DNA of 64,000 bases, taken from Macrostomum lignano. Taxonomy: Eukaryota. A program made the position numbers and the translations under genes. Positions 2,137-54,000 of this stretch are shown one piece after another. Below the pieces are notes generated by a model that made no database searches, had not been told where the DNA came from, and saw only the letters and a list, made by a program, of their open reading frames with translations. The first letter of the stretch is position 1. Every line of letters starts with the position of its first letter. The stretch covers positions 89,879 to 153,878 of the forward strand of contig NIVC01002639.1 of NCBI GenBank assembly GCA_002269645.1, written 5' to 3'.

Positions 2137-2339
2137 ATTTCAGTAGCGCACACACTATATTGAATGTGTTTTTGTTATAATTATTAAAATGAATCCTTTA
2201 ACACGTTGAATACTGTCATCTTATTGAAATGATGTTCAAAACGATGGCTTTATTAAAACTGTATACAAAAACTTTAGCTGGGGTGGATGCGATGTAATGA
2301 AGAATTGAGTGGTACAAGCAGGCCTAATTTCATTGGTTG

Positions 2340-24909: not shown

Positions 24910-24952
<43 letters not shown>

Positions 24953-25620: not shown

Positions 25621-26339
25621 GCTGTTAGCAGTTAATAACAGCTAATTAGCATAATTTATTACGCTTATAGCCAGAAATTTCAACGCCGCAAGATGCGAAC
25701 AGACAGGCAGTAGAAGACAGCACAGTCCGGATTAATAATTGGCACTGCATGGAGAGCGCATCTATTTAAAAGTTTTTTTCTCTTCTCTACCCAACCAACA
25801 CTCCTTTCTCCATGTCTGTCTCTGTCACCCCCGCTCTGTCCCTCCAGAGCCAACCCGCGAAGCCCCCCCCCAAGGCCCTGGATGTTGGGAACCCCTCCTC
25901 ACCCAAGTATTGCCAGAGACCCTTAGGCAGCCACCACCCCAAACCCGCCTACAGCCGTGGGGTGGTGGGTGGCGGGAAGGGGGGTTGGCCCCGGGTGTGC
26001 GTGGGGGTGTTGGGGTAGAAAATCAGGCATGAACTTTAGTCAGACAGGGTGGGCGGAACGGTCCGGTCAGTCCAGTCCAAGCGCTTAATTGCCGCCTATC
26101 CGCCCACCTATCGCGCGACCCTCGAGAACGAGGTGTCGAATAAAAAATGAGTGTCGGTGAACACTTGATCAACGACAAGGGAAGCTCCGTTGAACATCAT
26201 CGCCCCCCCCCCCTCCTTTCGTTAGGACAAGCCTAGCTCTGACGCACTAAAAAGGTGCCAACTTTTGAGAGCGTTTTTTTATTTCTATACAATACAATCG
26301 TTTGGAGGCGTTAAAAAAACTAGTCTCGATGTAGCGTCA

Positions 26340-28110: not shown

Positions 28111-28695
28111 TTGAAAAAGAGATCTAAGGAGCAGGCAGTCTAAGGGAGAACAAAAGCAAAGGGACAGAGCATCAAAAGGTGCTTTGCCAGCTGAAGATGC
28201 AGAGCCAGATGGGGAGCCAGATGAAGAGGTCTAGAACGGAGAAACGGATTTGCAGTAAAACTGTAGCCTTCACATGGAAATCTATACAGCTCAGGAAATG
28301 ATTATTTTGCTTCTATTATTAGGGATGGTGCGTCAATAAGAAGCGAACTAGGAGGAGGACTCGTGACGCACATGCCGCATCAGCAGCTGCTAGTGCGACT
28401 TCCGCCTGCTTCTCCTCTCGCACCGCCCAGTCCATTACGAAATTCAAGCTAAGCAAGGGCGAACATCTCGGCGTTTTGCCATCGAATTTCGCTACTCGAG
28501 TTACTTTATTAAACAAAATTTCCAATTTAGATAGTAGGGGGAGTAAGATAAAAACGCTTGGCGCTTAATCCTCACAAATCCTGCGCCCGGGTAGGCTGTG
28601 TCCGGTGACTGCTCAACGCCTACAGCGCTTTCAGCTTGGAAAGAATTATTTTATTCCTTTGCTCTCAGCTTTTCAGTGCAATTTGCAATGCCAGT

Positions 28696-29390
<695 letters not shown>

Positions 29391-29650
29391 TGGCTTGAAC
29401 CGATCCAGGCCGCCAGGAGTTCTTGTGCTGACCTCATTGTCAGCAAAAGTACCGCTGGAGCTGCATCCGCCGCTGGCAACCCGGATGCGCCGCCCCCTTC
29501 CCCCTGGTGCAGGCTCGCATGTATGACGCCAAAGTGCGCAGTCGCTTCTGTGAATGCAATCTCAAAAAAGTGGGACTCCGGGCCAACACTTCCTTCCTTC
29601 CTTCCCGGGCACAGAAGGGGCACCTGAGGTCCATTGTCGCTCAAAAAATG
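29391..29650 (-). mobile_element. Possible 3' end of a non-LTR retrotransposon abutting the (TCTA)n run
   Basis: GC-rich; the minus strand encodes CPFC...SHFF and HSQKRLRTL fragments resembling the C-terminal zinc knuckle of the LOA-like element, then runs into (ATCT)n. Confidence 0.35.
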
Positions 29651-36019: not shown

Positions 36020-39000
36020 CTGCGGGCGTTGTGTTGTTGTTTAGCAATCGGTATTTTGAGGGGCAGAAGTTTTAGCGGTTGAGGGGCTAGAAAACTGAGG
36101 CGCCAACGAGTGTACATTCGGGGCAGAAGTTTTAGCGGTTGAGGGGCTAGAAAACTGAGGCGCCAGTGTACATTCGGGGCAGAAGTTTTAGCGGTTGAGG
36201 GGCTAGAAAACTGAGGCGCCAACGTGTGTACATTCGGGGCAGAAGTTTTAGCGGTTGAGAGGCTAGAAAACTGAGGCGCCAACGAGTGTGTACATCGGGG
36301 CAGAGAGGTTAGAAAACAGAGACTTCAACAAACGCCATATTCTAGTAAATGAAATTCGGTTTGAATGGTGGCTAGGAGTACGGTGAAGGAGATAAAGGCC
36401 ATTGCCTCAGAAAACATACATCTTCCTTTGACATGGTCAACTTGTAGTCGTCCTCGCTATTTCTAGAGCTAGTCGCCTGACGATCCTTGGCCTCCTGATT
36501 CAACTGACGATAGGATGCCACCCTGGGAATCGACAGGAAGTTGTCTTCGTCCTCGCAGGAGCTCTCGCGATTGTGCCCGGGAACGCCGGCGCCTCCCATC
36601 ACCCGGCGCTGCCACTTCCTCTGCCTGTTCAGCTCCACCCAGCGTTTGCGCTCCGCCTCCTGAATTAAAGCGCGTGTAGAGGTACGTGTACGTACTTTAT
36701 ACATGTGTGTACTTTTATACTTACGGCTGTGTTTATGTTTAATAGTGTATCGAACAAAAATTCTCACCTCCTTCTTCTGGTGCGACACCAGATTCTTGAC
36801 GTAATGCAACAGTTCGTCAATTTTAGAATCGGTCGAGTCCTCGTCCTTAGCCGACAGGCACAGGGCCCGATTTAGCGGGAAGAAGTCGTACTTTTCCTCC
36901 GCAAGCTGTTATTGTAATGGCGATTGCGTTTTTCTCAAAACACGAGCGATGGTCCTATAATACTTTAAAATCATCTATTGCTATGACGTCAGCTTACCAG
37001 CTTGTAGACGTGCAAATCCAGCGACGTGTAGTCATTTCTAGCTGTGTCCTCCAGGTGAATGAAGAAAAATATATATGCCCACATGTTGTGCTCCTGCCTA
37101 ACGTGATAGTCGAATCCCATTCCGTGATGCTCAAAATCGTAGCTATTTCGCGAGCAGATGAAGCAGTTGTCGCGCATGTCCACCTCGGCTGTCCATTTCA
37201 TGTTGCGCAGCTCGCTAAACGTGTCAACAATGATGCCGAAGATGATGTTGAGGCCGACAGTGGTGATCAGGATGAAGAATGCGATGTGAAATATCGCAAC
37301 TGGTAGAAACGAGTCGAATGAACGCTTTTCACCAGCCGCATCCTCTGGCACGAGATTCTGCGGGGCGGGATGGAGCGAGCTCGTTTAAGCGATCTGGTGA
37401 GGGTTGGTTGAGGTGAGCTGGTGAGGGTTGGTTGGAGTGAGCTGGTGAGGTAAGCTGGTGAGGGTTGGTTGGAGTGAGCTGGTGAGGGTTGGTTGAAGTT
37501 GGCGAGGGTTGGTTGAAGTGAGGTTGATGAGGTGAGCTGGTGAGGGTTGGTTGAGGTGAGCTGGTGAGGGTTGGATAAGGTGGTAAGAACAGATGATGGA
37601 GCTTAATTGAAGAGATATTTAATCACATCGAACAAGTCGCCGATCAGGCCGAAGCGCAGCACGGAGATGAAGCACTGGTGCAGGTCCCGGCAGAACATCA
37701 GGTTGTTTGGTCCCGGGAAGGCGTGTCGGAATTGGGCAAAAGCGATCACGGAGAACAGGTACATGATGGCGATGCCCAGCACGGAGACCCAAATCAATGA
37801 CAGGCCTGGAAGATGTGTAAGGTAAATTTGAATGCCTCATTTTTTACTGGTTGGCTTTCAGACCGCATTTGGAGCATAATATTGTCTCACCGTTCATGGT
37901 GACTGCTTGAATGACACCCTGCAGCAGTTGGTTGTTGTTGACAATGTTCAATAGGTGGAAGGCGAAGAAGTACGGTCGATAAAATGTCCCAGCCAGCGCG
38001 CTAAAGAAGAATATGATGTAGTACAGGGTCGGTATGGAGAACAGGCTGACCGAGAGTTTGTCCCCGTCGCTGTCAGTGTCGCTAAATTCCTCTTCATCCT
38101 CGGTTTTCTTTTGACGCATTCGTCGGAGCCGCTCGAATAGGCCGCGCACGTTCGGAAGCTGGGGATGGTTGGCGACAAAGAAGGCCAGAAGGATGATGAA
38201 CGACAGGACCATCAGTAGAAGTGAGAATGAGTCCATCCAGAGGTGCAGATTTGGATAGTCGTCCTTCCAGCGGGCGGTTTCACTGTTGGTGGTGGCAGCG
38301 GTGGTTAAAGCGAATTAAGAGACAGAGACTTGAGAGACAGATTAGAAACTTAAGAGGCTTTTATTACTTAAGGTTGCTACTTCCTTGAGGCCACTATAGT
38401 TTCCAATGGTTGTTTGTTCCCAGCGGTTGTAAGATGTTGCCAGTTCCTAGACGTTGCCAGTTCCTAGATGTTGCCAGTTCCTAGACGTTGCCAGTTCCTA
38501 GATGTTGCCAGTTCCTAGATGTTGCCAGTTCCTAGATGTTGCCAGTTCCTAGATGTTGCCAGTTCCTAGATGTTGCCTGTTCCTAGATGTTGCCAGTTCC
38601 TAGATGTTGCCAGTTCCTAGATGTTGCCAGTTCCTAGATGTTGCCTGTTCCTAGATGTTGCCAGTTCCTAGATGTTGCCAGTTCCTAGATGTTGCCAGTT
38701 CCTAGATTTTGCCAGTTCCTAGATGTTGCTAGTTTCTAGATGTTGCCAGTTCCTAGATGCTGCCAGTTCCTAGATGTTGCCAGTTCCTAGATGTTGCCAG
38801 TTCCTAGATGTTGCCAGTTCCTAGATGTTGCCAGTTTCTAGATGTTGCCAGTTCCTAGATGTTGCCAGTTCCTAGATGTTGCCTGTTCCTAGATGTTGCC
38901 AGTTCCTAGATGTTGCCAGTTCCTAGATGTTGCCAGTTCCTAGATGTTGCCAGTTCCTAGATTTTGCCAGTTCCTAGATGTTGCTAGTTTCTAGATGTTG

Positions 39001-42000
39001 CCAGTTCCTAGATGCTGCCAGTTCCTAGATGCTGCCAGTTCCTAGATGTTGCTAGTTCCTAGAGCTAGTGAGGCTTAGGCCTACTAAGAAATTGATCCAA
39101 TTTTTTGAAAAACTTACTTTACTTCCAAGGCGGGAATCCAGGGGTGCGGCTTTAGCGTGGTGGGCGTATCAGATGACTCGATGCCGATGAGCATGAGGAT
39201 GTTCAATATGACGGCGGTGAGAGTAGCGCAGTGGTTCCAGATTAGCCAGAATCTTGTCAGCAAGATGGTGAAGGGATTTGAGAGCACTTTCTTCTGGTAC
39301 TGGATGTCCTTCAGTATAGCCTTGGTCCAGTCCATGAAGTCACGAACTTTTGTGCTCGGCGATGTTCGATCAACGTTCCACTTTAACTTCTCTTTGAGTT
39401 CCTCGCGCAGTACGTTCTGTGATTGATAGATAGATGAGTAGGTAGTTGGTGTTGAAAACTTAAAACCCTAAGAGAGACTTGGTTTAAAATCTTAATTCGA
39501 AGGAATAGTTCAAGCGGGCTGGCGTGTTCAACAGCTTCTTTGAACTTCTGCTTGCAAACCTAGGTTGTAGCCTAGTGATTAGAGCGTTGGACTCTCGACT
39601 TGAAGGTCGGGGGTTCGATTCCCGATTACACTGGAACAATTTGTGTCCTTTGAACAAGACACTCAACTCTGCATTGCTTCAGTTCACCCGGCTGTAAAAT
39701 GGTTGCCAGCATTAGCTGGGATAATTGAGGGTGTGTGTGGCGACCCCCCAGTCATTGGACTGGACAGCAATAGCTGCGGCTGAGCTGTCGGTTGCACATC
39801 TGGCCCAATCGGGGGCAGGTTTAATAAATTAATTAAGAACTATTATTGTTATTATGATTATGATTATTATTATTATTATTACTATTACTTGCGAAACAAC
39901 ATGAGGCAACAGCGCAACAGTGCTCGGAATATCCGCTAACCTTATTCTTCACTCGGAAGTGAATCTTCTGCAGGTTGTCATTCTTCAGTATCTCAATTGT
40001 CATCGAGTTCTTCTTGAAGAATTTGAAAGCCTTCTGCTGAAGCTCCGTGATTTGAAGCTCTGAAAAGAGTGTTTTTTATCGAAAAAATGACTAACAGCCA
40101 GTAGTGTACATGCAAAAATGAGTAGTATATATTGTACTAGTATCACAACGAAAAAGTCAAATTAGAGAAATAAACATAACTATACTCATTTTTAACGCAC
40201 AGTATAGCAAAGTTTAATTTGCATAGCAAAATTTGCCAGTATAAAACAATAGAAATAGGCAAAAATATCTGTACACTTCTACTGAATAGTTAAGTGTATA
40301 AGTAGTATATGGATATTCAAATGGTGTAAATGAATTAATTTTTAATTACCCTTTCCAGGAACGAAAAATTCTGAAAAAATCAAATCAGCCATGACAAAAT
40401 GTTAATTATAGAACTGAAAAGTACAATTCAATTTTCCGATTTTTTTTGCAAAAAGTAACCATATTGTAAGTGCAGAGGGCACTTTTTTCAGGCGAAAATA
40501 GTATCATTACCCTTCTTTGCAATGGTCGGGTCGATGTCGTACAGTCGGGCCAGGATGGTGTAAAATGAGAAGCCGACGCTGTACACCGCCTCCCGCAGCT
40601 CTTTGTCCTCTTCCTGTGTGGAATATGCACTTTTACTGATGGATTTGCAGATTCTGAGCCTGGCTTATCTAATCTGCAATCTACTAATGTAATATCTCGT
40701 GTAAACTACTTTTAGTTCAGTAGTAAGTTAAACAGAAGCATTTTAATGTATTTTTATAGCTAATTTATTGGCTCTTAACCCCCAGCCGAAACCCTCCAAC
40801 CGCGCCTTTCCACACTACCCACCGCCCCAATTTTATTGCCTTTCTCGGAATTCCAGCCTAAAGCTGCCATGTACATTTCAGTGGACCTGGCCAATGTACA
40901 TTTTGGTTGAACCAATTAGCAAGTTGTTTACGCCTGCAAGCTTGGGCTTCTAAACTTAACAAAGTCTTTATTTAAAAAAATAGCTTATGTATTCTTCTTT
41001 GCTACTGAACTGAAAGTAGAAAGCTTTGTTTTGCTAAATCATATGCCTGAGTGGCCCATCTAGTTATTTTGTCTAATCTAAAATGGAATATAACGTAATC
41101 TAATATAATAGTCCAATCTAATACAATCTAATCACGCTAATCTAATCTAATATAATCTTATCTAATCTAATCTAATCTAATCTAATCTAATCTAATATAG
41201 TCAATTCTAATGAAATCTAATGCAATTTAACAAAATCTAATCTAATCTAATATAGTCAATTCTAATGAAATCTAATGCAATTTAACAAAATCTAATCTCA
41301 ATCTAATATAGTCCATTCTAATGAAATCTAATGCAATTTAACAAAATCTAATCTCAATCGTTACTAGCCAATGCCAAATCCCTTCTCAAACCCACCACAA
41401 GCCGGTTAAATCCGGTGCTTTTCTTGGAGGACTGCTGAGCCTCGTAGCACTCGGTCATGACCCTGTAGAGCGCTTTCTTGTCCAGCGTGTCCTTGACCTC
41501 CCTAGCGATCACGATCGCTTCAGCCGAGTTCTCCTCAATCAGGGAGATGACCAGGTTGGCGATGGTCTGCCTCAGTTCAACCACCTGTTCTGGCTCGCAG
41601 TTATCGAAGTCCGCGGTTCGCATTATGAAATTAATGTAGTCAATAATCTTGTTGTCATACACTGTGGATCGGTTCTCCTGGTTGCCCTGAAGTTCGTTTA
41701 AGGAATAGTTCGGTGTCATTCCGGTATTTAAACTGACCCTGGAGATACGAAATGGCACTTTTTATCCGAAATGGCACTTTTTATCCGAAATGGCACTTTT
41801 TATCCGAAATGGCACTTTTTATCCGAAATGGCACTTTTTATCCGAAATGGCACTTTTTATCCGAAATGGCACTTTTTATCCGAAATGGCACTTTTTATCC
41901 GAAATGGCACTTTTTATCTGAAATGGCACTTTTTATCCAAAATGGCACTTTTTATCCGAAATGGCACTTTTTATCTGAAATGGCACTTTTTATCCGAAAT

Positions 42001-45000
42001 GGCACTTTTTATCCGAAATGACACTTTTTATCAAAAATGACACTTTCTATCAAAAATGGCACTTTAAGATTCGAAATGGCACTTCTGGATTCGAAATGGC
42101 ACTTCTGGATTCGAAATGGCACTTCTGGATTCGAAATGGCACTTCTGGATTCGAAATGGCACTTCTGGATTCGAAATGGCACTTCTGGATTCGAAATGGC
42201 ACTTCTGGATTCGAAATGGCACTTCTGGATTCGAAATGGCACTTCTGGATTCAAAATGGCACTTCTGGATTCGAAATGGCACTTCTGGATTCGAAATGGC
42301 ACTTCTGGATTCAAAATGGCACTTCTGGATTCGAAATGGCACTTCTGGATTCGAAATGGCACTTCTGGATTCGAAATGGCACTTCTGGATTCGAAATGGC
42401 ACTTCTATATTTGAAGTGGCACTTCTGGATTCGAAATGGCACTTCTGGATTCGAAATGGCACTTCTGGATTCAAAATGGCACTTCTGGATTCGAAATGGC
42501 ACTTCTGGATTCGAAATGGCACTTCTGGATTCGAAATGGCACTTCTGGATTCGAAATGGCACTTCTGGATTCGAAATGGCACTTCTGGATTCGAAATGGC
42601 ACTTCTGGATTCAAAATGGCACTTCTGGATTCGAACTCACGGCGCAGAACTCGTTGACAGTTGAGAACAGCTGGATGAGCAGGTCAATGGTGTCCGCATT
42701 AATATTGGAGTAGGCCACGTTGATGAACTGGGACACTTCGGCCACGATGTTGAAGGACTTGATGTTGTCCGGCTGCTCGCGCAGGTAGTTCTGCAGGCCG
42801 AAGTGCTGCCCGTCGCAGATGCTGGCGAGGACCTTCAGCACCAGAGCGATGTAGCCATCGTCCTTCATTGAGATGGTCTCCTCTGGACTGCCAGACTGCT
42901 GCTGCTGCTGAGCTGCGGCCGGGTCCTGCAATTGGGTGTCGAATATTCGATCGTCTGGTTGCTTAACAACGGTCATGTTTTTTGGGTCGCTTAGCAACGG
43001 CCAATTAGAACCCAATATGTTGCTTAGCAACGGTCATTTATAGTTTCTTGGATTGCTTAGCAACGATCATTTAAAGTTTCTTGAGTTGCTTAGCAACGGT
43101 AATTTAAATTTTCTTAAGTTGCTTAGCAACAATCATTTAGAGTTTCTTGGGATGCTTAGTGACGGCCAATTACAGCCCAGTATGTTGCTTAGCAACGGTC
43201 TCTTGAAGTATCTTGAGTTACTTAGCAACGGTCATTTGGAGTTTCTTTGGTTGCTTAGCAACGGTTCATTTGAGTATATAGCTATGATTTAATCTATTTA
43301 TAGCTACTCTGAGCCCAGTCCAGCAGATCCCAAACCTCGAATTCCTCAGCGTCGTCAACCAGGAGCTCCCGGGTGTCCGCAGCCGCCCGACCGCCCCTGC
43401 CGCCTTCCGCCGAAGTTCCGTTAGCGAAGGCCACCTTCTTCTTGGACTTGGCGCTGTTTTTAGCGCCGGAGCCTGTCGACGCGCCCGAAGGTCCGGCCTG
43501 CTGCGGCGGCTGTGCCGACGATGTCGGCCGTTTTCGCTTCCGGTTTCGACTTTGAATCTGGCTGAGACTGACGCGGCGCTGAGTGTCGGTGCGGAAATGG
43601 CGGTTGCGTTTGCGCGAGGGTTGCGTCAGATCGACGTACTGGGGACAGAGTGGGTCACTAAATCGACGAACTGGGTAAGGTAGTGTCGCTTTATCGACAA
43701 GGAAGGGAAGTGTCGCTTTATCGACAAGGAAGGGAAGTGTAGCTTTATCGACAAGGAAGGGAAGTGTCGCTTTATCGACAAGGAAGGGAAGTGTAGCTTT
43801 ATCGACAAGGAAGGGAAGTGTCGCTTTATCGACAAGGAAGGGAAGTGTCGCTTTATCGACAAGGAAGGCAAGTGTCGCTTTATCGACAAGGAAGGGAAGT
43901 GTCGCTTTATCGACAAGGAAGGGAAGTGTCGCTTTATCGACAAGGAAGGGAAGTGTCGCTTTATCGACAAGGAAGGGAAGTGTCGCTTTATCGACAAGGA
44001 AGGGAAGTGTCGCTTTATCGACAATGATGGGAAGTGTCGCTTTATCGACAAGGAAGGGAAGTGTCGCTTTATCAACAAGGAAGGGAAGTGTCGCTTTATC
44101 AACAAGGAAGGGAAGTGTCGCTTTATCGACAAGGACTTACGATTTATTTTAAGGGGCGTTTTGTATCATATTTTAATGAAACTGACGAAAACTTTATGGT
44201 GGGAAAATGATGGAAGGCAATAAATTAAGTTACTGTGGCAATACAATCATAAATACGAATGATACTCAAAAACTAGGCAGTCTGAACGGACGAACTGCAA
44301 ATAATAAATTCTATGAAACAGAGATTCTAAGAAATCTGCTATTTTTAACGTTGCTGAAAACTGTATTGATTAAATTTCACGGCAGAAAGGTAAGTTAAAT
44401 ACAAATCCAACTATTAAATACGAAAAATAATCGTGGACATATTTATTGCAAAATATTTATGAAAATGCTGTGCGAGCTTTTCGTCTGAAGTGAGGGCGGA
44501 TTCTGATTGGGGTCCTGAAGGGTTGAAGCCTGAAGAGAGGGCGGATTCTGATTGGGGTCCTGAAGGGTTGAAGCCTGAAGTGCGGGCGGATTCTGATTGG
44601 GATCCTGAGGAGTTGAAGCCTGAGGTGAGGGCGGATTCTGATTGGGATCCTGAGGAGTTGAAGCCTGAGGTGAGGGCGGATTCTGATCGGGGTCCTGAAG
44701 GGTTGAAGCCTGAAGTGAGGGCGGATTCTGATTGGGATCCTGAGGAGTCGAAGCCTGAGGTGAGGGCGGATTCTGATTGGGGTTCTGAAGGGTTGAAGCC
44801 TGAAGTGAGGGCGGATTCTGATTGGGATCCTGAGGAGTCGAAGCCTGAAGTGAGGGCGGATTCTGATTGGGGTCCTGAGGAGTCGAAGCCTGAAGTGAGG
44901 GCGGATTCTGATTGGGATCCTGAGGAGTTGAAGCCTGAAGTGAGGGCGGATTCTGATTGGGGTTCTGAAGGGTTGAAGCCTGAAGTGAGGGCGGATTCTG

Positions 45001-48000
45001 ATTGGGGTCCTGAGGAGTCGAAGCCTGAAGTGAGGGCGGATTCTGATTGGGGTCCTGAAGGGTTGAAGCCTGAAGTGAGGGCGGATTCTGATTGGGGTCC
45101 TGAAGGAGTTGAAGCCTGAAGTGAGGGCGGATTCTGATTGGGATCCTGAGGAGTTGAAGCCTGAAGTGCGGGCGGATTCTGATTGGGGTCCTGAAGGGTT
45201 GAAGCCTGAAGTGAGGGCGGATTATGATTGGGATCCTGAGCAGTTGAAGCCTGAGGTGAGGGCGGATTCTGATTGGGGTCCTGAAGGGTTGAAGCCTGAA
45301 GTGAGGGCGGATTCTGATTGGGATCCTGAGGAGTTGAAGCCTGAGGTGAGGGCGGATTCTGATTGGGGTCCTGAAGGGTTGAAGCCTGAAGTGAGGGCGG
45401 ATTATGATTGGGATCCTGAGGAGTTGAAACCTGAGGTGAGGGCGGATTCTGATTGGGATCCTGAGGAGTTGAAGCCTGAGGTGAGGGCGGATTCTGATTG
45501 GGGTTCTGAAGGGTTGAAGCCTGAAGTGAGGGTGGATTCTGATTGGGGTTCTGAAGGGTTGAAGCCTGAAGTGAGGGTGGATTCTGATTGGGGTCCTGAG
45601 GAGTCGAAGCCTGAAGTGAGGGCGGATTCTGATTGGGGTCCTGAAGGGTTGAAGCCTGAAGTGAGGGCGGATTCTGATTGGGGTCCTGAAGGAGTTGAAG
45701 CCTGAAGTGAGGGCGGATTCTGATTGGGGTCCTGAGGAGTTGAAGCCTGAAGTGCGGGCGGATTCTGATTGGGGTCCTGAAGGGTTGAAGCCTGAAGTGA
45801 GGGCGGATTATGATTGGGATCCTGAGGAGTCGAAGCCTGAAGTGAGGGCGGATTCTGATTGGGATCCTGAGGAGTTGAAGCCTGAGGTGAGTGCGGATTC
45901 TGATTGGGGTCCTGAGGAGTCGAAGCCTGAAGTGAGGGCGGATTCTGATCCGAAGAAGGTGCACGCGAAGGTGTATTCAGCACGCCTGTGAAGTATGAGA
46001 CAAACCAGGCCTATGGGCTATGGTCTGCGATGCTTCACGCCTGCCCCTATCTTCAGCAGGTTAAGGCTGGTGGGAGGTCTGCACCCGCTATTTGCCGCTG
46101 GCAGCCGCAGACCCCCCCCCACGCTGTCTCGCAAGTCGACACAGGGGTACCCGTCCCGCGTGTGTTCAAGGCAGACCCTAGGGCTGCTGGACAGACTGGG
46201 CTCCGACGCTGGCGACCCATCCAGTGGCTTCGGCCGAACTTGGGTGTGCGGGTCTGGCTTGCCAGCCTGCAGGCCGTGGTACTGCTTAACGTACCCCCTA
46301 ATGCCTAAGGTGTTTGACCGTGCCGATGGGCTGGAAGGCCGGGGATTGTCCGGTCGCTAGCGGTCCTTTTTCTTTTTCTTCTTTCCTCTTTTCTTTGTGA
46401 CTCAGCTCACTCCTTCCCGCTTTCAGCTATGGCGTCATCCGCCTCTTTTAACCCCGCTGAAGCCGGGGCCCCGGCAACTCCGGCCGGTGACTCTGGCACC
46501 AGCGCCGCTCCACCGGGGGCAGATGGGCTTGCCGCCGGCTCGTCCGGTGACATGCCCGCACGCGCGACCGGGCCCTCCGCGGAGGCCCGACGTGCCCGCA
46601 ACCAACGCCGCAACGAGCGGCGACGACGACTGCGGGATACTACGGGCCGGCCACCGGCGGAGGGGGAACCTAGGGAGGGCGAGGCTGCTGTTGTCCGAAA
46701 GGAGCCACAGCAACCCCTGCCCTCCAGGATACAATTACCTGGTAAACCTGCTACCAGCGCGGCTGGGCCTTCGGGAACCGCCGCCACCAACTACGCCTCA
46801 AAGGTCAAGCTCCAACCGGCGGTCATCGTCTTCGGGGAAGAGAAAGACCTCACGGCCGACGAGCTCGACAGTGCCTGGCGCACCATTGATGCTGCGCTCA
46901 TCGACCAGCTCCTGGAGGGCCGCCCTGTGAGCGTGGTCAAGTCTGCCAAGACCGACGGCTGCATTTTCATCTGGTGCAACTCGGAGGAGAGCAGCCGCAA
47001 TCTACGCGAGCTTCTGCTAAAGCTGAACTGGCCCAATAAGCTCGGCAAGCTCGTCTTCGCCAGCGAGGGCGAGCGACAAAAGACCCAGCGCTTTCGCGTC
47101 TGGATCCCGGCCGGCAGTGCCATTAAGTCCGGAGATCAGCTTAGGCAAATTTTGCTAAAGCTGCACCCCGACCTTGAGGTCAATGGGCTCCTACACCACG
47201 CCACTTCCCGCAAGGAGAAGGGGGCTACGGTGATCCTAGGGCTCTCTGATGACTGGGCTAAGCGCTTGCCGCCTAAGTCCACAATTCATATTGGTCTGAC
47301 TCAGCTGACCATCCTCCGTTGCGAGGAGCGGAAAGCTGATGAAGCCAAGAATGCCAAGGCTTCCGAAACCGGAACTGGGGCCCAGGCTCCTCCGGCAAAG
47401 AAGCTGAGGCAAACGGCCGACCCTATGCCCAGTAAAGCACTTCGCGCTGCTGAAACCGGAAATCGCAATCGCAGACCCGCCAGGAGCACCCGGAGGTCCG
47501 GTCTAATCCAGCGCGCGCTGGACTAGGCCAAGAGCCTCCGGGCGTATAGTGAGCGGGCCCGCGCTTCTTCTCGCGCTCCTCCCCAACAGCCAGAAGGCCA
47601 GGCTGTAAGCGGGGAGGCGCTGACCGACTGGTTCGAGTCTGTGACTCACCAGGAGGCTGGCGCCACCCGTATCGACCTGACCGACGAGGCAGAGGGGACG
47701 GGCAGTGACAGCACCGAAGCACGCAGGGGAGGCGACGGTTACACCGTCCACGCTGGGCTCACGCCCGCGGAGAACTCCACTGCCACCCTAACTGCCGAGG
47801 ACACTGAAACTCCCATGGAGGTCTGCGGGTCAACCACCACTGAAAAGGAGGATGACCTGCTCAACGATTCCCCAACTGCGTGATAATGATCAGCAGCCAG
47901 GGAATCCATTGCTTACAGATTAATCTGCAACACTGCGTCGCAGCCTCGGTCAACCTTATGCGTTACGCCGAGCTCGACACGCCGGGGCTCATCCTCGTCC

Positions 48001-51000
48001 AGGAACCCTGGACTCTCAGAGGTAAGCCTCAAAACGCCCCTGACGGCTAAAACTGTTTTTATACTTACCCTCGCGAGGCCAACCAGCCTCCCAGAGCTTG
48101 CATCTTTGCGACCAAACGCTCAGTGCGTGGCTCAGATCGGACCTGTCTAACAGGGACATTTGCGTCATACAATCCGAGGACCTTCTTCCTGGGAAGACCA
48201 CCCTCATCGCCTCGGTTTACTTACCAGGTGATGCTGCGGTCGTCCCCAGAGCCCTCGCTACGCTGGTAGAGCTTTGCTCTGCCAAAAACTACGAGCTCAT
48301 GGTTGCCGGCGACATCAACGCCCACCACACTCACTGGGGCAGCACTGGCACTAATCAGAGAGGCGAAGACCTCCTAGCTTACGTTGCCTCTACGACCCTC
48401 GAGTTCTGCAACTCTGGGTCTACCCCTACCTTTGACAACGGACGGTGGTCGGAGGTGATCGACGCTACGCTCGCAACGCCCAGACTCTACCAGAGTATTG
48501 GGACGTGGCGGGTGCTTCCAGCGTCCTCACTCTCGGATCACAAGTTCATCTCCTTCAACCTGATGGCCGCGCGTAGCGCAACTCGTGTTACGTGGAGACG
48601 GAACGCCAGAAATACTGATTGGGAAACTTTCGGGCTCGCCCTGAAGGAATTCCATCGGTCTCCTGGCCAACCATCCACGATCACGTCCTGCCAAGAAGCG
48701 GATGAGTGCGCGCGACTGTGTTGACAGAGTTAACCGCCGCTTTTGAGGCGTCCTGCCCTTTAAAAGCCTATAAAGGGAAAAATCCACACCGTGGTGGAAT
48801 CCCGAGCTCGGCAATCTCCGTCGCAGAGCTAAGAGACTCCACCGCAGAGCAACTAAAACTAAGAGCCCAGCGGACCAAACCGCCTATCATGAAGCTATCC
48901 ATGAGTTTAAAAGGCATGTTAGGAATGCAAAAGCTCAAAAATGGCGACAATACTGTGAGGAGCTAGAGGGCTCCCACCTCCAGAATTATTAAAGCGCTTA
49001 CGCTGGACAAAATGTCTAAGTTTTCCTCGGTCAAACGCACCGACGGCACGTCCACGGACAACCCAGGGGAAACGCTTGATGTAATGCTCACTGCGTTTTT
49101 CCCAACGAGCCAGCTAGCCCGACCACTCCGGATCACTCGGAGGGAGGTCACGCGCTGGCTGCCTCTATCATCACGGAGGACCGCATCGTGAGAGCGGCTA
49201 ATTCCTTCAAGCCTTTCAAAGCCCCAGGACCCGATGGCATTGTACCGGCCCTCCTAAGAGAGGCGGTTAAATGCCCAGGCTTCCTGCGTAAACTTTGCAG
49301 CCTTTTTCGGGCGTGCATCACGCTTGGTTATGTCCCACAGGCATGAACCGAGACAAAGGTGATTTGTATCCCTAAGCCAGGCCGCCCAGACTACCATTCT
49401 ATCAAATCCTTCAGACTGATCAGCCTGACCTCCTCCCTGGTCAAGCTGATGGAGAGACTGGTGCTTTGGCGCCTTCTCTCTGTTGAGCTGAAGAACAAAC
49501 CTCTCAGCGAGAACCAGCACGCTTTTCGGGCGGGTCGCTCCACTGAAAGCGCGCTGCACGTCCTGGTCGATAAACTCGAGAAGGCCGTGCTTGGTAATGG
49601 CTTTGCTCTGGGGATCTTCCTGGACATCATTGGCGCCTTCGATAACGTCCTCTTGGAGGCGTTCCGAAGAGCTCTTTGTGAGAGGCAAACGCACTCACAT
49701 CTCACCAGGTGGATCATGTACATGATCAGCCATCGCACGGCCACCGCCAATCTGCTGAGCCACCAGAGGACGGTCCCCGTCTGCAAAGGTAGCCCGCAAG
49801 GTGGGGTGCTGTCTCCAGTTCTCTGGAACATGGTCATCGATGAGCTCCTTCGGGATGCTCGGCCTGACCCCATTCTGAAAATAGGATATGCGGATGATGT
49901 CACCGCGGTGGCATCTGGTCCGTCCCCTGATACCCTCAGGGACCTTCTTCAGAACTTCATCTACGCCGCTGAGCAATGGGCGGATCGCTGTGGTTTAAGG
50001 CTCTCTGAGACTAAGACCGCAGCGATCATGTTCACCAGCAGGACCAAGTGGCAGATTCGGCCGCTCACGCTTTACGGAAGGGAAATCCCCTTCTGCAAGC
50101 AGACTAAATGTCTAGGTATTACCCTGGACCACAGGCTGAACTGGTCACCCCACGTTCAAACAAAAGCCAAGAAGGCCCTCGCAGTCTTCGCGCAACTGCG
50201 CAGGGCTGTCGGCACCACCTGGGGGCTCACCCCCAAGCTCCTCTGGTGGATCTACACTGCAATGGTTAGGCCCGCTATCTCGTATGGCGGCCTGATCTGG
50301 GCTAGCGCCCTGCAGATAAAGACCTGTCTAGAGGCTCTCAGGAGAGCGCAAGGGCGCGCATGTCGCATGATCATGAGCGCCCCTCCGTCTGCTCCTTACG
50401 ATGGCCTCAACGCCTTCCTCAACATTCCTCCGCTGGACATCTTTGTCCACAGGGAAGTGGCTAAGACTGCCCGCCGTCTAACTGACGCTGGCATTCGAAT
50501 CCTGCCTCATAGGGCCATGGCTAAGCGCAAGCTTCTGCCCCACGCCGACCTCTGGCTCAAGGACTTGAGAGACAGCGGCGGGCTCCACGTCCTATCTGAC
50601 GGTGAACCCCGCACTCTCAACCTCTTTCAGCGCTACAAGGTCACCATCCCTTCTAGGGATGTTGCAAATGACCACTGGAATTTTCAGGAGGTCCATTGCT
50701 ACACGGACGGATCCATCAAAGACGGTCGTGCCGGCTTTGGGGTCTCCATCATCATCAACGGCCGCGTCATTGCCACGCATGCCCAGCACACTGGCAGACT
50801 CTCCACGGTCTTCCAGAACGAAGTCCTTGCCATCAGCTCCTGCGCTGCAGAGCTGAATGCCAAGGGCACGAGAGGAGAGACTATTGTCATCCACTCCGAC
50901 AGCCAAGCGGCCTTACAGGCCCTTTGTCACACCACAACGAACTCCCGGACAGTCGCCGACTGCGTCCGGCAGCTCAACCTCCTGGCCAGTAGCAATACTG

Positions 51001-54000
51001 TCAGGCTGAAGTGGATCCCAGGGCACGCAGGGTTTCCGGGGAACGAGCTGGCAGACACCCTCGCCAAGAGGGGCGGCTCTGGCTCTTTCCTTGGCCCTGC
51101 CCCCTGGTCCCTATGCCCTCGACAGTCATCAATCGTCAGATCGATGACTGGGCTGACTCCCTCCACAGAAACAGATGGGCGGGCACCCAAAACTGCCGGC
51201 AATCTCGTGCCGCGGTTCCTTGCCCGTCTCACAGGCTCAGAAACGTTCTTCTGAACCAAAATCGGAAGGATATTCGAGCCCCCGCCGGCCATGGCTACCT
51301 CGCCAGGCACTGCTTCCTCCGAGGTGACCTCGAAAGTGAACTTTGCATTTTTTGCGAGTACGACAATGAAGATGCTTAGCACTTTGTTTGTCACTGCCAT
51401 TTCTTTAGCAGAGATCGGCTACGCTACCTCGGGCCGAACCCGTCCATTGATGAGGTCTGCCAGCCCGACAGCATCCCACGGCTCATCCAGTTCCTTCGGG
51501 CGACTAGACGAGCCAGTTTCTTCCCCACGGAAGATCCCGCTGCAGGACGGACCGGCGGACCACCCTGACCGGCCCCACGCCTCTGCCTGTCTGCGGGCCT
51601 TCAGGGGCTAGCGGAATGGGCGACCCTCGCCTCCCCGCTGTGTCTACGGACCACCCTGCAGCTAAGTAAGTAAGGGGTCCTGAGGAGTTGAAGCCTGAAG
51701 TGAGGGCGGATTCTGATTGGGTTCCTGAGGAGTTGAAGCCTGAAGTTAGGGCGGATTCTGATTGGGATCCTGAGGAGTTGAAGCCTGAAGTGAGGGCGGA
51801 TTCTGATTGGGATCCTGAGGAGTTGAAGCCTGAAGTGAGGGCGGATTCTGATTGGGATCCTGAGGAGTTGAAGCCTGAAGTGAGGGCGGATTCTGATTGG
51901 GATCCTGAGGAGTCGAAGCCTGAAGTGAGGGCGGATTCTGATTGGGGTCCTGAGGAGTCGAAGCCTGAAGTGAGGGCGGATTCTGATTGGGGTCCTGAGG
52001 AGTCGAAGCCTGAAGTGAGGGCGGATTCTGATTGGGATCCTGAGGAGTCGAAGCCTGAAGTGAGGGCGGATTCTGATTGGGGTCCTGAAGGGTTGAAGCC
52101 TGAAGTGAGGGCGGATTCTGATTGGGGTCCTGAAGGGTTGAAGCCTGAAGTGAGGGCGGATTATGATTGGGATCCTGAGCAGTTGAAGCCTGAGGTGAGG
52201 GCGGATTCTGATTGGGATCCTGAAGGGTTGAAGCCTGAAGTGCGGGCGGGATTCCAATAGGTTACAAATACTTTTAGGAAAAGATTATTATGATGTGAAC
52301 AGAAATTGGCAGGCCACTTCGATTGGAATAAATTCAGTGTACATTGCGATAATGAAAAATAAACTTAAATTAAGATACCCAAGTGTGCATGCCGCTGGGA
52401 GACATTTTCTTATCAGCCAGTTAAACGCGGCGCATATTAATAGTAAGCAAACAAAAAGTACACTGATATTGAAATTACACATAGAAAATTAAACTACATA
52501 CTTGTAAAAAGACTGAAGTTAGCACTCGTAGTTCTGTTATGCCCTGATTGGATGGTCGGCGCGGCGAGAGCGAAAAATTATCGCTTGCGTGTTTAAACAA
52601 AAAATTATCCTAATTTTTAGCAACTCTACAGAAATTTATTCCACTCGTATTTTCCCGATACACTACTGAGTTTTCCGATTATAAGTAGAAATATGCTAAT
52701 TTTTATAACTTTCTAAATCTTGAAAGAACATTACGTTCTTTTCTGGCCTCTCTAATTTTAAATTCTAAGAAAGTCCTGACGATTTATGATCGCTGCGTGC
52801 GCAGTGAATACTTGTTGTCGCTGCTCCAGACTCGCGCGCGCTTAAAGTTAATTACATTAAATCAGGGGCTTACCATCAGCTGTCCGCCATGCTAAAAATG
52901 GAATAAGTTGTTGAGATATTTGTCCAGATGCGCGACAGTTTGATAAGCAAAATTTTATGAATGTACGGAAGTCATATGTAACGATTTTTTGTCACCAGAA
53001 CCATAGGCAACAGGAGATAGGCTAGCCAATAAGCAAATAGTTTCATTGTTGGGGCAATCAAATCTTAGGCAATGTTTTCTTTTGTCTTGGTCCAAACAGA
53101 CTCCATAGGGTATCTTACCCTAATGTACGTTCAATCCATATGCACCTAATTTACCTCTCCGTCTCTCCCTTAGACCGATGTACACCCTATTCTTCTCCTC
53201 TATCCCAATTTACACCCTATTCCTTTCCTCTACCCCATTGTACACCCCATTTCTCTCCTCTACCCCATTGTACACCCTATTTCTCTCCTCTACTTCAATG
53301 TATGTACACCATATTCTCCTCCTCTACCCCAATGTATGTACACCCTATTTCTCTCCTCTACCCCAATGTATGTACACCCTATTTCTCTCCTCTACCCCAA
53401 TGTATGTACACCCTATTCTCCTCCTCTACCCCATTGTACACCCTATTTCTCTCCTCTACCCCAATGTATGTACACCCTATTCTCCTCCTCTACCCCATTG
53501 TACACCCTATTCTCCTCCTCTACCCCATTGTACACCCTATTTCTCTCCTCTACCCCAATGCATGTACACCCTATTCTCCTCCTCTACCCCATTGTACACC
53601 ATCCATATACGAAATTTCACAATGTTTTTATAGTAACAGACTGTACAGTTCTACTCAGAAAGCAAAAAGCTAATGGTATGAGTTAATATTTATCTTAAAT
53701 TAGTTATATAAGAAGCATGCATGCGCCGTGCGGTAATCCTGCATCTTTCATGAGCTAAGCCAGTCAAGAATATGCGTAACTACATTGTAGCTGTTGCTAA
53801 CGGGCAAAAAACTAAAATTACAAGCGAAAATGCATTTATGAGTTATTCCAGGATACTTCTTAGCAATTCGCTTACCGTGAGATCGCTGCTTGCCTGCTCA
53901 ATTTTCTGCTCAATTTGGTATTGCCGAATTTGCTGCGGGATTAAAGAAAGAAAATTTAGAAAATTTTATACAATTTTCCTTATTGACAGACATCTAACCC

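What the first reader, a model, noticed from the sequence alone, without database searches (positions are those of the whole stretch)
36998..37805. Non-canonical IP3R pore: GLIGD filter and very short luminal loop
Seen: TM5-RHAFPGPNNLMF-CRDLHQCFISVLRFGLIGDLFD. Known: canonical IP3Rs have GLRxGGGVGD/GGGIGD and a long luminal loop, and RyRs have GVRAGGGIGD. Here two residues are missing and Leu replaces Gly. TM6 (NIIFGIIVDTFSELR) and the CFIC..H..EHN zinc site are intact, and no stops or frameshifts occur in ~1,800 codons. Inference: a functional member of a divergent IP3R/RyR-like lineage (IP3R-B/RIR-type, lost in vertebrates as I recall) with possibly different selectivity and an unknown ligand. 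The ligand-binding region is outside the window.
Basis: partly seen in the sequence, partly recalled or inferred. Interest (0 to 1): 0.72.

Follow-up and report, generated by a model that had tools for sequence, protein, structure and literature searches.

The report
Divergent IP3-receptor-like channel, flatworm gene
This is an intact, evolutionarily constrained flatworm (Macrostomum lignano) gene for a third kind of IP3-receptor/ryanodine-receptor-like channel, whose ion-selecting loop is shorter than, and unlike, the one shared by all studied family members. The lineage is known but barely studied.

Summary
Minus-strand exons 37805-37627 and 37357-36998 encode S5, a 12-residue loop, a pore helix ending ...VLRFGLI, then GDLFD instead of GGGxGD, followed by an intact S6 gate and Zn finger.

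- **Gene and organism.** The window is Macrostomum lignano, locus BOX15_Mlig033347, annotated only as hypothetical. I built a 26-exon, all GT-AG model of 1,759 codons. Its junctions match the public annotation.
- **Not an error or pseudogene.** A second genomic copy differs by 14 synonymous and 2 non-synonymous codons. The motif G[LV][ILM]GDxx[DE] recurs in nemertean, annelid, gastropod and octopus proteins.
- **Lineage.** Trees place the gene in a metazoan clade (97% bootstrap) inside a holozoan clade with Capsaspora and choanoflagellates (100%). It never groups with canonical IP3R or RyR. This fits the published InsP3R-B lineage.
- **Domains and ligand.** Architecture is IP3R-type. The Ca2+-sensor acidic residues are kept, but the IP3-binding RTTGR motif is lost.
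- **Short loop.** It is not special: RyRs and some IP3R-A-type proteins have it too.
- **Open.** Selectivity and ligand remain untested.

Verdict: a new member of a known but barely studied kind. Moderate interest.

The parts
36372..63757 (-). In-window part of the Macrostomum lignano IP3R-B-like channel gene (BOX15_Mlig033347 family). It has 26 exons, 1,759 codons plus stop, covering roughly the C-terminal two-thirds of the protein. The 5' exons lie beyond position 64000.
   Evidence: All junctions are AG...GT and the frame is open. Every junction shared with PAA56314.1 is identical. Pfam finds RIH, RIH_assoc and Ion_trans.
37627..37805 (-). Exon 22: S5 helix (37797-37729), 12-residue luminal loop RHAFPGPNNLMF (37728-37693), pore helix CRDLHQCFISVLRFGLI (37692-37642) and the filter remnant GDLFD (37641-37627).
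   Evidence: The AF2 secondary structure of orthologue P0001 shows the pore helix ending at ...GLI, then G-D in coil, then a short turn.
37358..37626 (-). Phase-0 intron between the filter and the post-filter linker. It holds a degenerate 24/37/82-bp minisatellite at 37383-37582.
   Evidence: GT at 37626-37625 and AG at 37359-37358. Tandem Repeats Finder.
36998..37357 (-). Exon 23: acidic post-filter linker NLVPEDAAGEKRSFDS (37357-37310), S6 with the conserved gate LNIIFGIIVDTFSELR (37309-37205) and the C2H2 zinc finger CFIC...H...EHN (37165-37085). The N in ARNDYT (37042-37025) is the equivalent of hIP3R3 T2581.
37891..38282 (-). Exon 21: S2 (38230-38165), an acidic cytosolic S2-S3 linker, S3 (38035-37982) and S4 (37981-37922).
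   Evidence: It aligns with the TMD of IP3R3 and RyR.
39118..39416 (-). Exon 20: pre-S1 juxtamembrane region and S1 (39251-39180).
42641..42925 (-). Exon 16: RIH_assoc / ARM3 Ca2+-sensor region. D in SICDGQH (42823-42803) is the equivalent of hIP3R3 E1882. The E in TVNEFCAG is the equivalent of E1946; that motif spans the exon 16/17 junction (42661-42641 plus 41686-41684), with the E itself in exon 16.
   Evidence: Pfam RIH_assoc, E 6.5e-19. Alignment to 6dqj. Residue identities are taken from PMC9522344.
61152..61611 (-). Exon 2: second RIH domain (ARM2).
   Evidence: Pfam RYDR_ITPR, E 8.8e-9. It aligns to IP3R3 residues 1175-1448 but not to RyR.
52874..52891 (-). 18-nt micro-exon encoding HGGQLM, flanked by TTTTTAG| and |GTAAGC.
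   Evidence: It is an exact match to the annotated protein PAA56314.1, which implies the annotation had transcript support.
36372..36905 (-). Exons 24 and 25 (36905-36768 and 36659-36372): C-terminal coiled-coil region, a low-complexity tail and the stop codon.
   Evidence: The junction HQKKE|EAERKR is present in three annotated proteins.

Best explanation
The window carries most of a Macrostomum lignano gene for a large intracellular channel subunit of the IP3R/RyR superfamily. It is neither a canonical IP3 receptor (IP3R-A) nor a ryanodine receptor. It belongs to the third, holozoan-wide lineage described as InsP3R-B.

**Shown here**
- The gene is intact, spliced as annotated and under strong purifying selection.
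- Its cytosolic scaffold is IP3R-type: beta-trefoil/MIR, two RIH domains and RIH_assoc, with no SPRY or RyR repeats.
- It keeps the S6 gate, the C-terminal zinc finger and acidic residues at the two Glu positions of the shared IP3R/RyR Ca2+-activation site. The third position is Thr to Asn.
- In its clade the canonical GGGxGD filter is replaced, with a 2-residue deletion, by G-[LV]-[ILM]-G-D-x-x-[D/E].

**Inferred**
- It assembles as a tetrameric endoplasmic-reticulum cation channel opened by cytosolic Ca2+ together with a ligand that is probably not IP3 bound in the canonical way.
- The pore constriction is made by the Gly-Asp at the C-terminal end of the pore helix plus a second acidic ring three residues later. 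This resembles the Asp-ring filters of TRP channels more than the glycine-rich IP3R/RyR filter.
- Conductance and Ca2+/monovalent selectivity should therefore differ from canonical channels.
For: - **Sequence and splice.**. The junctions are identical to PAA56314.1, including an 18-nt micro-exon.
- **Organism and gene.** The pore is identical to M. lignano PAA56314.1, PAA93573.1, PAA86874.1 and A0A1I8JKV2.
- **Selection.** Exons differ at 17 of 4,773 nt, with 14 synonymous and 2 non-synonymous codons. The blastn blocks spanning the locus, mostly intron, differ by about 2-3%.
- **Domains.** RIH, RIH_assoc and Ion_trans in the window. Full-length relatives add Ins145_P3_rec and MIR and have no RyR-specific domains.
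- **Similarity to solved channels.** Over the whole in-window protein, IP3R3 scores 211 bits in 3 stretches and RyR 113 bits in the TMD only. Over S4-S6 alone, RyR aligns in one piece.
- **Phylogeny.**
  - GLIGD clade: 92-92.5% bootstrap.
  - Metazoan clade: 82% in the pore tree, 97% in the 686-column tree.
  - Holozoan clade with Capsaspora, choanoflagellates and Corallochytrium: 100%.
  - Replicates joining the window to IP3R-A: 0 of 200.
  - Window identity over 587-672 compared columns: 40-47% to spiralian members, 37% to Capsaspora CAOG_04510, 21% to the Schistosoma IP3R-A.
- **Filter conservation.** The motif recurs in flatworm (two M. lignano paralogues), nemertean, annelid, gastropod and cephalopod proteins.
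- **Structure.** AF2 shows the pore helix ending at GLI, then G-D, then a short turn. The best fold matches are IP3R3/IP3R1, then RyR1.
- **Ca2+ site.** E1882 becomes D, E1946 stays E, T2581 becomes N (residues per PMC9522344).
- **IP3 site.** Equivalents of R265, K508 and R511 are kept. T266, T267, G268 and R269 are lost across the whole clade.
Against: - No functional data exist for any GLIGD-type protein. Conduction, selectivity, ER localisation and gating are all inferred.
- The AF2 model is a single chain of an orthologue (pLDDT about 76-81 at the filter), not a tetramer, so pore geometry is not established.
- The trees are neighbour-joining on simple corrected distances. The RyR/B-clade relationship was not resolved, because only RyR pore fragments were available.
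- I could not verify that CAOG_04510 is the CO.InsP3R-B of Alzayady et al.; the paper is not held.
- Three IP3-binding residues that I recall from the mutagenesis literature as essential (R265, K508, R511) are conserved, so IP3 binding is not excluded.
- PMC9522344 notes that Capsaspora IP3Rs appear not to be Ca2+-regulated like the mammalian ones despite conserved sensor residues.
- I did not show that M. lignano itself also has a canonical IP3R and RyR. I showed this only for other flatworms.
Confidence: 0.75

Rival explanations
1. The protein is a pore-altered subunit that no longer releases Ca2+. It could be a monovalent-cation (counter-ion) channel of the ER. It could instead be a non-conducting scaffold or regulatory subunit that keeps the channel fold for other reasons.
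For: The glycine-rich filter that Prole & Taylor tie to high conductance and Ca2+ permeability is absent. Bulky Leu/Ile/Phe residues replace the glycines. Sister groups show very different sequences at the same place (mollusc HHG[IF]V[ED], Saccoglossus GLLESFHE, Capsaspora GLENGLAS), so the filter is evolutionarily labile in this lineage. By my recollection of the Alzayady et al. abstract, CO.InsP3R-B showed no IP3-gated Ca2+ release. The citing paper I could read says only that IP3R-B could not bind IP3.
Against: Within the GLIGD clade the motif G-x-x-G-D-x-x-[D/E] is conserved across four phyla, with two acidic positions suited to cation binding. The S6 gate residues, Zn finger and Ca2+-sensor acidic residues are conserved, and the gene is under purifying selection. 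This is what a gated, conducting channel would show.
Confidence: 0.2
2. It is a decaying duplicate (pseudogene) of a channel gene in a highly duplicated, repeat-rich genome.
For: M. lignano carries several near-identical copies (g1, g2, g5). The L001 copy has a 1-bp deletion in one exon, and all public gene models are truncated. The introns are full of repeats and hold a retrotransposon.
Against: The window copy has 1,759 open codons over 26 canonical splice junctions. Codon changes between copies are 14 synonymous to 2 non-synonymous. An 18-nt micro-exon in the annotation implies transcript support. Orthologues are conserved in other phyla. The single-base deletion in L001 could be a long-read assembly error.
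Confidence: 0.03
3. It is a canonical IP3 receptor, and the odd filter results from mis-assembly or from my, or the reader's, choice of splice site.
For: The filter lies exactly at an exon end, next to a minisatellite-bearing intron.
Against: The same junction occurs in four independent protein predictions and in a second genomic copy. Colinear sequence is found in Lymnaea, Capitella, Octopus and Tubulanus. The whole protein, not just the filter, is only about 21% identical to a flatworm IP3R-A and never groups with it.
Confidence: 0.01
4. It is a truncated or divergent ryanodine receptor.
For: The S4-S6 segment aligns slightly better and without a loop gap to RyR1 (50.9 bits, against 46 for IP3R2). 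The short luminal loop is RyR-like.
Against: The cytosolic regions match only IP3R. Full-length relatives are about 2,500-2,700 aa with no SPRY or RyR-repeat domains. RyR fragments form a separate 100% clade.
Confidence: 0.01

Closest known systems
InsP3R-B lineage (Alzayady et al. 2015, Mol Biol Evol 32:2236; exemplar Capsaspora owczarzaki CO.InsP3R-B)
   Same: IP3R-type domain architecture, with phylogenetic separation from both IP3R-A and RyR. The nearest unicellular relatives are a Capsaspora IP3R homologue (CAOG_04510, 37% identity over 657 columns) and choanoflagellate proteins. The canonical IP3-binding RTTGR motif is lost, consistent with the reported inability of IP3R-B to bind IP3 (PMC9113742). 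Capsaspora CAOG_04510 shares the 2-residue filter deletion.
   Different: The spiralian clade has its own conserved filter, G[LV][ILM]GDxx[DE]. Capsaspora has GLENGLAS, and the choanoflagellate members keep GGGLGE. I could not confirm that CAOG_04510 is the cloned CO.InsP3R-B. I found no description of the filter variant in the searchable literature.
Canonical IP3 receptors (IP3R-A: ITPR1-3, invertebrate Itpr, Schistosoma IP3R)
   Same: Overall architecture: beta-trefoils/MIR, RIH x2, RIH_assoc, 6-TM pore, Zn-finger LNK domain and C-terminal coiled coil. They are the best-scoring solved structures (IP3R3, 211 bits). The S6 gate motif LN(I/L)IFG(I/V)I(V/I)DTF is shared, and the two Glu positions of the Ca2+ sensor stay acidic.
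   Different: The filter is GLI--GDLFD instead of GLRxGGG[VI]GD. The loop is 12 residues, against about 62-100 in vertebrates. Identity to a flatworm IP3R-A is only about 21%. IP3-contact residues T266, T267, G268 and R269 are absent, and the protein is never sister to IP3R-A in trees.
Ryanodine receptors
   Same: A short S5-to-pore-helix loop and an acidic post-filter segment (EDAAGE against EDPAGDE). The S4-S6 alignment is continuous. The Ca2+-activation site and Zn finger are shared.
   Different: No SPRY, RyR-repeat or EF-hand regions. The protein is half the size. The filter lacks GGGIGDE. RyR forms a separate 100% clade.
TRP-channel Asp-ring selectivity filters (for example TRPV1 GMGD, TRPA1 ...GD), recalled from general knowledge
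   Same: Analogy only: a short filter in which a Gly-Asp directly follows the pore helix, which would give a single ring of four carboxylates (AF2 secondary structure).
   Different: There is no homology beyond the general 6-TM tetrameric cation-channel fold. The resemblance is a lead recalled from memory, not a tested relationship.

Membership tests
IP3R/RyR superfamily | RIH (RYDR_ITPR) and RIH_assoc cytosolic domains | tested here: met
   Pfam PF01365, E 8.8e-9, and PF08454, E 6.5e-19, both above their curated cut-offs.
IP3R/RyR superfamily | C-terminal 6-TM pore module with P-helix, the S6 motif ...IFG.I.D.F..LR and a C2H2 zinc finger after S6 | tested here: met
   Ion_trans hit. Alignments to IP3R3 and RyR1/2 at E about 1e-19 to 1e-20 show CFIC...H...EHN conserved. 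Foldseek top hits are IP3R3, IP3R1 and RyR1.
IP3R/RyR superfamily | N-terminal beta-trefoil (Ins145_P3_rec / MIR) region | tested here: met
   This region is outside the window. Exons matching residues 89-851 of the full-length Tubulanus protein lie in the second locus copy at L001:559-7957. Pfam Ins145_P3_rec and MIR are found in the full-length relatives.
Canonical IP3 receptor (IP3R-A) | GGGxGD selectivity filter | tested here: not met
   The window has GLI--GDLFD, with a 2-residue gap in HMMER and MAFFT alignments. The canonical motif is as given in PMC3194816.
Canonical IP3 receptor (IP3R-A) | IP3-coordinating residues R265, T266, T267, G268, R269, R504, K508, R511, Y567, R568, K569 (IP3R1 numbering) | tested here: inconclusive
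   Tested on the second locus copy and on relatives. R265, K508 and R511 are kept, and R504 becomes K. T266, T267, G268 and R269 are replaced by a clade-wide HLR[IV]R...P motif with an insertion. Y567 to S, with R568 and K569 kept, was judged by eye only. The ARM1 motif also matches the generic second RIH repeat, so its conservation is not diagnostic.
Canonical IP3 receptor (IP3R-A) | Groups with bona fide IP3R-A in phylogeny | tested here: not met
   0 of 200 bootstrap replicates. Identity to the Schistosoma IP3R-A is 21%. The named IP3R-A fragments cluster elsewhere in the pore tree.
Ryanodine receptor | SPRY and RyR-repeat domains, about 5,000 aa, GGGIGDE filter | tested here: not met
   No such Pfam hits in the window protein or in the full-length relatives tested (Tubulanus 2,674 aa, Capsaspora 2,564 aa). 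The filter differs. RyR is a separate 100% clade.
InsP3R-B lineage | Monophyly with non-A, non-RyR holozoan IP3R homologues (Capsaspora, choanoflagellates) | tested here: met
   The holozoan clade, including Capsaspora CAOG_04510, Salpingoeca spp. and Corallochytrium, has 100% bootstrap over 686 columns. The metazoan subclade has 97%. Caveat: neighbour-joining only, and the identity of CAOG_04510 with the published CO.InsP3R-B was not verified.
InsP3R-B lineage | No IP3 binding and no IP3-gated Ca2+ release | not testable with these tools
   This is a biochemical property. The sequence shows only partial loss of the binding motif.
InsP3R-B lineage | Present in invertebrates, absent from vertebrates | tested here: inconclusive
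   Named members are flatworm, orthonectid, nemertean, annelid, mollusc and hemichordate. No vertebrate appeared among the names I looked up, but most of the 150 top representatives were not named and absence was not systematically tested.

The most novel reading that the evidence does not exclude
Spiralian InsP3R-B channels have replaced the glycine-rich IP3R/RyR filter with a two-residue-shorter, TRP-like Gly-Asp filter backed by a second acidic ring. On this reading they form a physiologically distinct class of Ca2+-activated intracellular channel, with different conductance and selectivity and a ligand other than IP3. It would be a third intracellular release-channel type operating alongside IP3R and RyR in molluscs, annelids, nemerteans and flatworms. 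Its filter would have been reshaped several times within the lineage (GLIGD, HHG[IF]V[ED], GLLESFHE, GLENGLAS).
Probability: 0.3. Interest if true: 0.75.

Novelty: new member of a known kind. Interest (0 to 1): 0.45.

Why it matters
Textbook accounts say invertebrates have one IP3R and one RyR (for example PMC9113742). This gene shows that a flatworm keeps a third, selected family member. With its relatives, so do octopus, snails, annelids, nemerteans and a hemichordate.

The selectivity filter of this family member differs from the GGGxGD motif held to underlie the high conductance and Ca2+ permeability of canonical IP3Rs and RyRs (PMC3194816). It therefore offers two things:
- a natural experiment on how that filter works;
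- a pointer to an unstudied intracellular channel with an unknown ligand, in animals that include regeneration models (M. lignano supports RNAi and transgenesis, by my recollection; not checked here).

It also shows that the public M. lignano gene models miss the whole N-terminal third of the protein.

Tried and rejected
- I used a profile of returned fragments plus single window exons instead.
- **Frame error.** My first alignment, A1, included one window exon translated out of frame because the exon starts in phase 1. I redid it as A2.
- **First gene model incomplete.** It had 21 exons and 1,591 codons. It missed one upstream exon (63757-63655), a 28-codon exon (59492-59409), a 19-codon exon (53932-53876), the 18-nt micro-exon and an 81-codon linker exon (43578-43336). 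Comparison with L001 and PAA56314.1 corrected it.
- **Alternative acceptor rejected.** An acceptor near 63205 for exon 1 did not fit the spacing in relatives.
- **Key paper not held.** Alzayady et al. 2015 is not in the library. Searches for InsP3R-B, IP3R-B and CAOG_04510 gave only one relevant citing sentence.
- **Word-indexed protein search.** It returned only fragments under about 310 aa. No full-length RyR or vertebrate IP3R was available for the long-alignment tree, so RyR placement relative to the B clade was not resolved.
- **Foldseek.** The single-chain model gave the expected families but poor global superposition (rmsd about 13 Å) and no residue mapping. It adds nothing on filter geometry.
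- **Antisense ORF.** The + strand ORF 36917-37306, opposite exon 23, has no support and was ignored.
- **Short loop.** I dropped it as a distinguishing feature because RyRs, the Schistosoma IP3R and many protist homologues have short loops too.
Full report
**1. Observation**

The stated peptides are encoded on the minus strand.
- Exon 37805-37627 gives ...LSLIWVSVLGIAIMYLFSVIAFAQF (S5), RHAFPGPNNLMF (loop) and CRDLHQCFISVLRFGLIGDLFD, and ends at a GT donor.
- After a 269-nt intron, which contains a minisatellite at 37383-37582, exon 37357-36998 continues. It reads NLVPEDAAGEKRSFDSF..., then S6 (GLNIIFGIIVDTFSELR), then the zinc finger CFICSR...H...EHN.
- HMMER alignments to solved IP3R3 and RyR1 and a 67-sequence MAFFT alignment agree on a two-residue gap: VLRFGLI--GDLFD against IP3R VLSHGLRSGGGVGD and RyR MYVGVRAGGGIGDE.
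- The S6 gate motif and the C-C-H-H zinc site are intact.

**2. Gene model and source**

I chained the minus-strand open stretches with GT-AG rules. I then corrected the model against a second locus copy and public predictions.
- The result is 26 exons between 63757 and 36372, all AG...GT, with 1,759 codons and a stop.
- Every junction shared with GenBank PAA56314.1 is identical.
- That annotation includes an 18-nt micro-exon (52891-52874, HGGQLM) with perfect splice signals. This implies transcript support.
- The exhaustive representative search returned proteins with the window's exact pore sequence. They are Macrostomum lignano BOX15_Mlig033347g5/g1/g2 and A0A1I8JKV2, named only 'hypothetical' or 'RIH_assoc domain-containing'. 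The window is therefore M. lignano.
- A second paralogous locus exists in the same species: A0A1I8FAF2 and A0A1I8FJM8 (named) and A0A1I8I413. A0A1I8FAF2 and A0A1I8I413 carry RFGLIGDLFE.

**3. Is it functional?**

Locus L001 (NIVC01000260.1) is a second copy of the same locus, about 97% identical.
- Across my first 21-exon model the two copies differ at 17 of 4,773 nt (0.36%). The long blastn blocks spanning the locus, mostly intron, differ by about 2-3%.
- There are 14 synonymous and 2 non-synonymous codon changes.
- The pore exons are identical in both copies.
- L001 has a 1-bp deletion in one exon (L001:9828-10139, the counterpart of window 63160-62848), which the window copy lacks. That deletion explains why the public gene model starts there.
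- Together these results rule out assembly error and make a pseudogene unlikely.

**4. What family?**

- **Domains in the window.** Pfam finds RIH, RIH_assoc and Ion_trans.
- **Full-length relatives.** Tubulanus polymorphus XP_074653546.1 (2,674 aa) and Capsaspora CAOG_04510 add Ins145_P3_rec and MIR. They show no SPRY or RyR-repeat domains.
- **Solved structures, whole protein.** IP3R3 scores 211 bits in three stretches (ARM2; ARM3 plus TMD; pore plus CTD). RyR scores 113 bits, in the TMD/CTD only.
- **Solved structures, S4-S6 only.** RyR1 is marginally better and aligns without the loop gap.
- **Size of the family.** A profile of the pore module finds 7,249 representative clusters, 1,028 of them at E<=1e-30. 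The top 150 are all IP3R-sized and align across the pore without a long loop.

**5. Phylogeny**

*Pore-to-CTD tree* (179 columns, 200 bootstraps). It includes named IP3R fragments (fish, barnacle, oyster, myxozoan) and RyR fragments (gecko, moth, nematode).
- RyR: 100%.
- GLIGD clade: 92%.
- GLIGD plus the mollusc 'HHG' group plus Saccoglossus: 82%.
- This grouping lies next to Capsaspora CAOG_04510 and a choanoflagellate group.
- Canonical IP3R-A clusters elsewhere.

*Longer tree* (686 columns, ARM3 to CTD, full-length representatives).

| Grouping | Bootstrap |
|---|---|
| GLIGD clade (Macrostomum, Tubulanus, Octopus, P0035) | 92.5% |
| Metazoan clade, adding Patella and Saccoglossus | 97% |
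| Holozoan clade, adding Capsaspora, Salpingoeca spp. and Corallochytrium | 100% |
| Window joined to the Schistosoma IP3R-A | 0 of 200 replicates |

Window identity is 40-47% to spiralian members, 37% to Capsaspora CAOG_04510, 32% to Salpingoeca and 21% to the Schistosoma IP3R-A.

This is the pattern described for InsP3R-B. [quoted passage not shown] From memory, the Alzayady et al. 2015 abstract also states that InsP3R-B was lost in vertebrates. I could not read the paper.

Limits of this analysis:
- It uses neighbour-joining only.
- RyR is represented only by pore fragments.
- The B-clade/RyR relationship is not resolved.

**6. The filter in context**

- Of 135 representative hits with a pore region, 93 carry a GGxG[DE]-type filter and 42 do not.
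- The two-residue deletion is shared by all metazoan members, by Capsaspora CAOG_04510 and by a few unnamed proteins.
- Choanoflagellates and Corallochytrium keep GGGLGE with an equally short loop.
- Within the GLIGD clade the motif G-[LV]-[ILM]-G-D-x-x-[D/E] is conserved:
  - M. lignano (two paralogues), RFGLIGDLF[DE]
  - Lymnaea and Octopus, RYGLIGDLFE
  - Tubulanus, RYGLIGDLLD
  - Capitella, RYGLLGDYDE
  - several metagenomic or transcriptomic fragments
- Molluscs also have a sister group with HHG[IF]V[ED]. Saccoglossus has GLLESFHE.
- The short S5-P loop is not unusual. RyR1 has about 16 residues, the Schistosoma IP3R about 25 and IP3R-A-like representatives about 17. The long loop is a derived feature of some IP3R-A proteins.

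**7. Structure**

I ran AlphaFold2 on orthologue P0001 (62% identical; S5 to CTD), using a 57-sequence alignment. Mean pLDDT is 75.6, and about 76-81 around the filter. The predicted elements are:
- S5 at residues 2-23;
- a 14-residue loop;
- a pore helix at 38-51, ending ...RYGLI;
- G52-D53 in coil;
- a one-turn helix, LFEN;
- S6 from residue 67.

Foldseek's best matches are IP3R3 and IP3R1, then RyR1. The model is a single chain, so it fixes the secondary structure but not the pore geometry.

**8. Gating and ligand clues**

- **Ca2+-activation site.** This site is shared by IP3R and RyR: hIP3R3 E1882, E1946 and T2581 (PMC9522344). The window has D, E and N at these positions. From my own knowledge, the Thr contributes a backbone carbonyl, so an Asn there may be tolerated.
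- **N-terminal region.** It lies outside the window but is present in L001:559-9920, unannotated. Its similarity to the IP3R1 binding core is weak (E 1e-9), close to that for RyR N-termini (E 1e-7).
- **IP3-contact residues.** In a family alignment the whole holozoan clade has HLR[IV]R...P, with an insertion, where IP3R-A has FLR-T-T-G-R. Equivalents of R265, K508 and R511 remain and R504 becomes K. T266, T267, G268 and R269 are lost.
- **Caveat on ARM1.** The ARM1 basic motif also matches the generic second RIH repeat, so its conservation is not diagnostic.
- Canonical IP3 binding is therefore doubtful, but not excluded.

**9. Mechanism proposed**

*Shown:* an intact, selected, IP3R-architecture channel subunit of the InsP3R-B lineage, with a shortened, glycine-poor filter that is conserved in its clade.

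*Inferred:*
- a tetrameric ER cation channel gated by cytosolic Ca2+ plus an unknown ligand;
- a constriction formed by the Gly-Asp at the pore-helix C-terminus and a second acidic ring three residues on, which aligns with D2550 of IP3R1 and D4899 of RyR1;
- hence altered conductance and selectivity.

The main rival is a channel that has lost Ca2+ permeation, or a non-conducting subunit. Sequence alone cannot exclude it.

**10. Novelty and verdict**

- The lineage is published.
- This gene is an unannotated member: public models are 'hypothetical' and lack the N-terminal third.
- I found no description of the conserved spiralian GLIGD-type filter in the searchable literature.
- I file it as a new member of a known kind, of moderate interest.
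- The more novel reading is a functionally distinct third release channel with a TRP-like filter. It is plausible but untested.

Noticed in passing
window 46318-51251 (+), inside the 9.3-kb intron between exons 52891-52874 and 43578-43336: An apparently intact non-LTR retrotransposon lies antisense to the channel gene. It has an ORF1-like 402-aa ORF, an endonuclease domain (Exo_endo_phos_2), a reverse transcriptase (RVT_1) and RNase H. It is flanked by about 45-bp tandem repeats at roughly 44.4-46.0 kb and 51.6-52.3 kb.
   Followed up: partly
L001:559-9920 (NIVC01000260.1), and L001:9828-10139 against window 63160-62848: The public M. lignano gene models for this locus (1,371-1,696 aa) miss the whole N-terminal third of the protein: the beta-trefoil, MIR and first RIH exons. 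In the L001 copy a 1-bp deletion in one exon breaks the frame exactly where the annotated gene begins. The window copy is intact at that point. Whether the deletion is real or a long-read error is unknown.
   Followed up: partly
window 52874-52891 (-): An 18-nt micro-exon (HGGQLM) with perfect splice signals lies in the variable linker between ARM2 and ARM3. It is followed by a basic, low-complexity 81-codon exon (43578-43336). These linker exons have no counterpart in the IP3R3 alignment.
   Followed up: partly
related proteins P0042 and P0052 against P0047, P0053, P0056 and P0063: The two-residue filter deletion has a patchy distribution. It is present in Metazoa and Capsaspora. It is absent in choanoflagellates and Corallochytrium, which keep GGGLGE. 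This does not fit the species tree. It implies either independent deletions or hidden paralogy with differential loss.
   Followed up: no
M. lignano proteins P0009, P0049 and P0050 (A0A1I8I413, A0A1I8FJM8, A0A1I8FAF2): M. lignano has a second, clearly distinct paralogue of this channel (83 of 109 residues identical for P0009). P0009 and P0050 carry RFGLIGDLFE. P0049 reads RFGFDWRLVRN at the same place, probably a mis-predicted junction. The lineage is therefore duplicated in this species, beyond the near-identical homeologous copies.
   Followed up: partly
window 63-590 (-), 678-1124 (-) and 1930-2139 (-): A MULE transposase domain ORF (E 2e-12) lies next to a PHD-finger ORF and proline/alanine-rich tandem repeats (1128-1800). 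This is probably a Mutator-like DNA transposon remnant.
   Followed up: partly
window 18282-18515 (-) and 24436-25641 (-): C2H2 zinc-finger coding segments. One is a 402-aa open stretch with poly-Q/poly-A tracts. They probably form one multi-exon zinc-finger gene downstream of the channel gene on the same strand.
   Followed up: partly
window-wide, e.g. 38432-39000, 28654-29433, 18863-20265, 21725-22718, 41709-42710, 43679-44220: The window has an extraordinary density of minisatellites with periods of about 12-90 bp. Several sit inside introns of the channel gene, such as a 17-bp unit repeated 33 times at 38432-39000. They generate long spurious ORFs on both strands.
   Followed up: no
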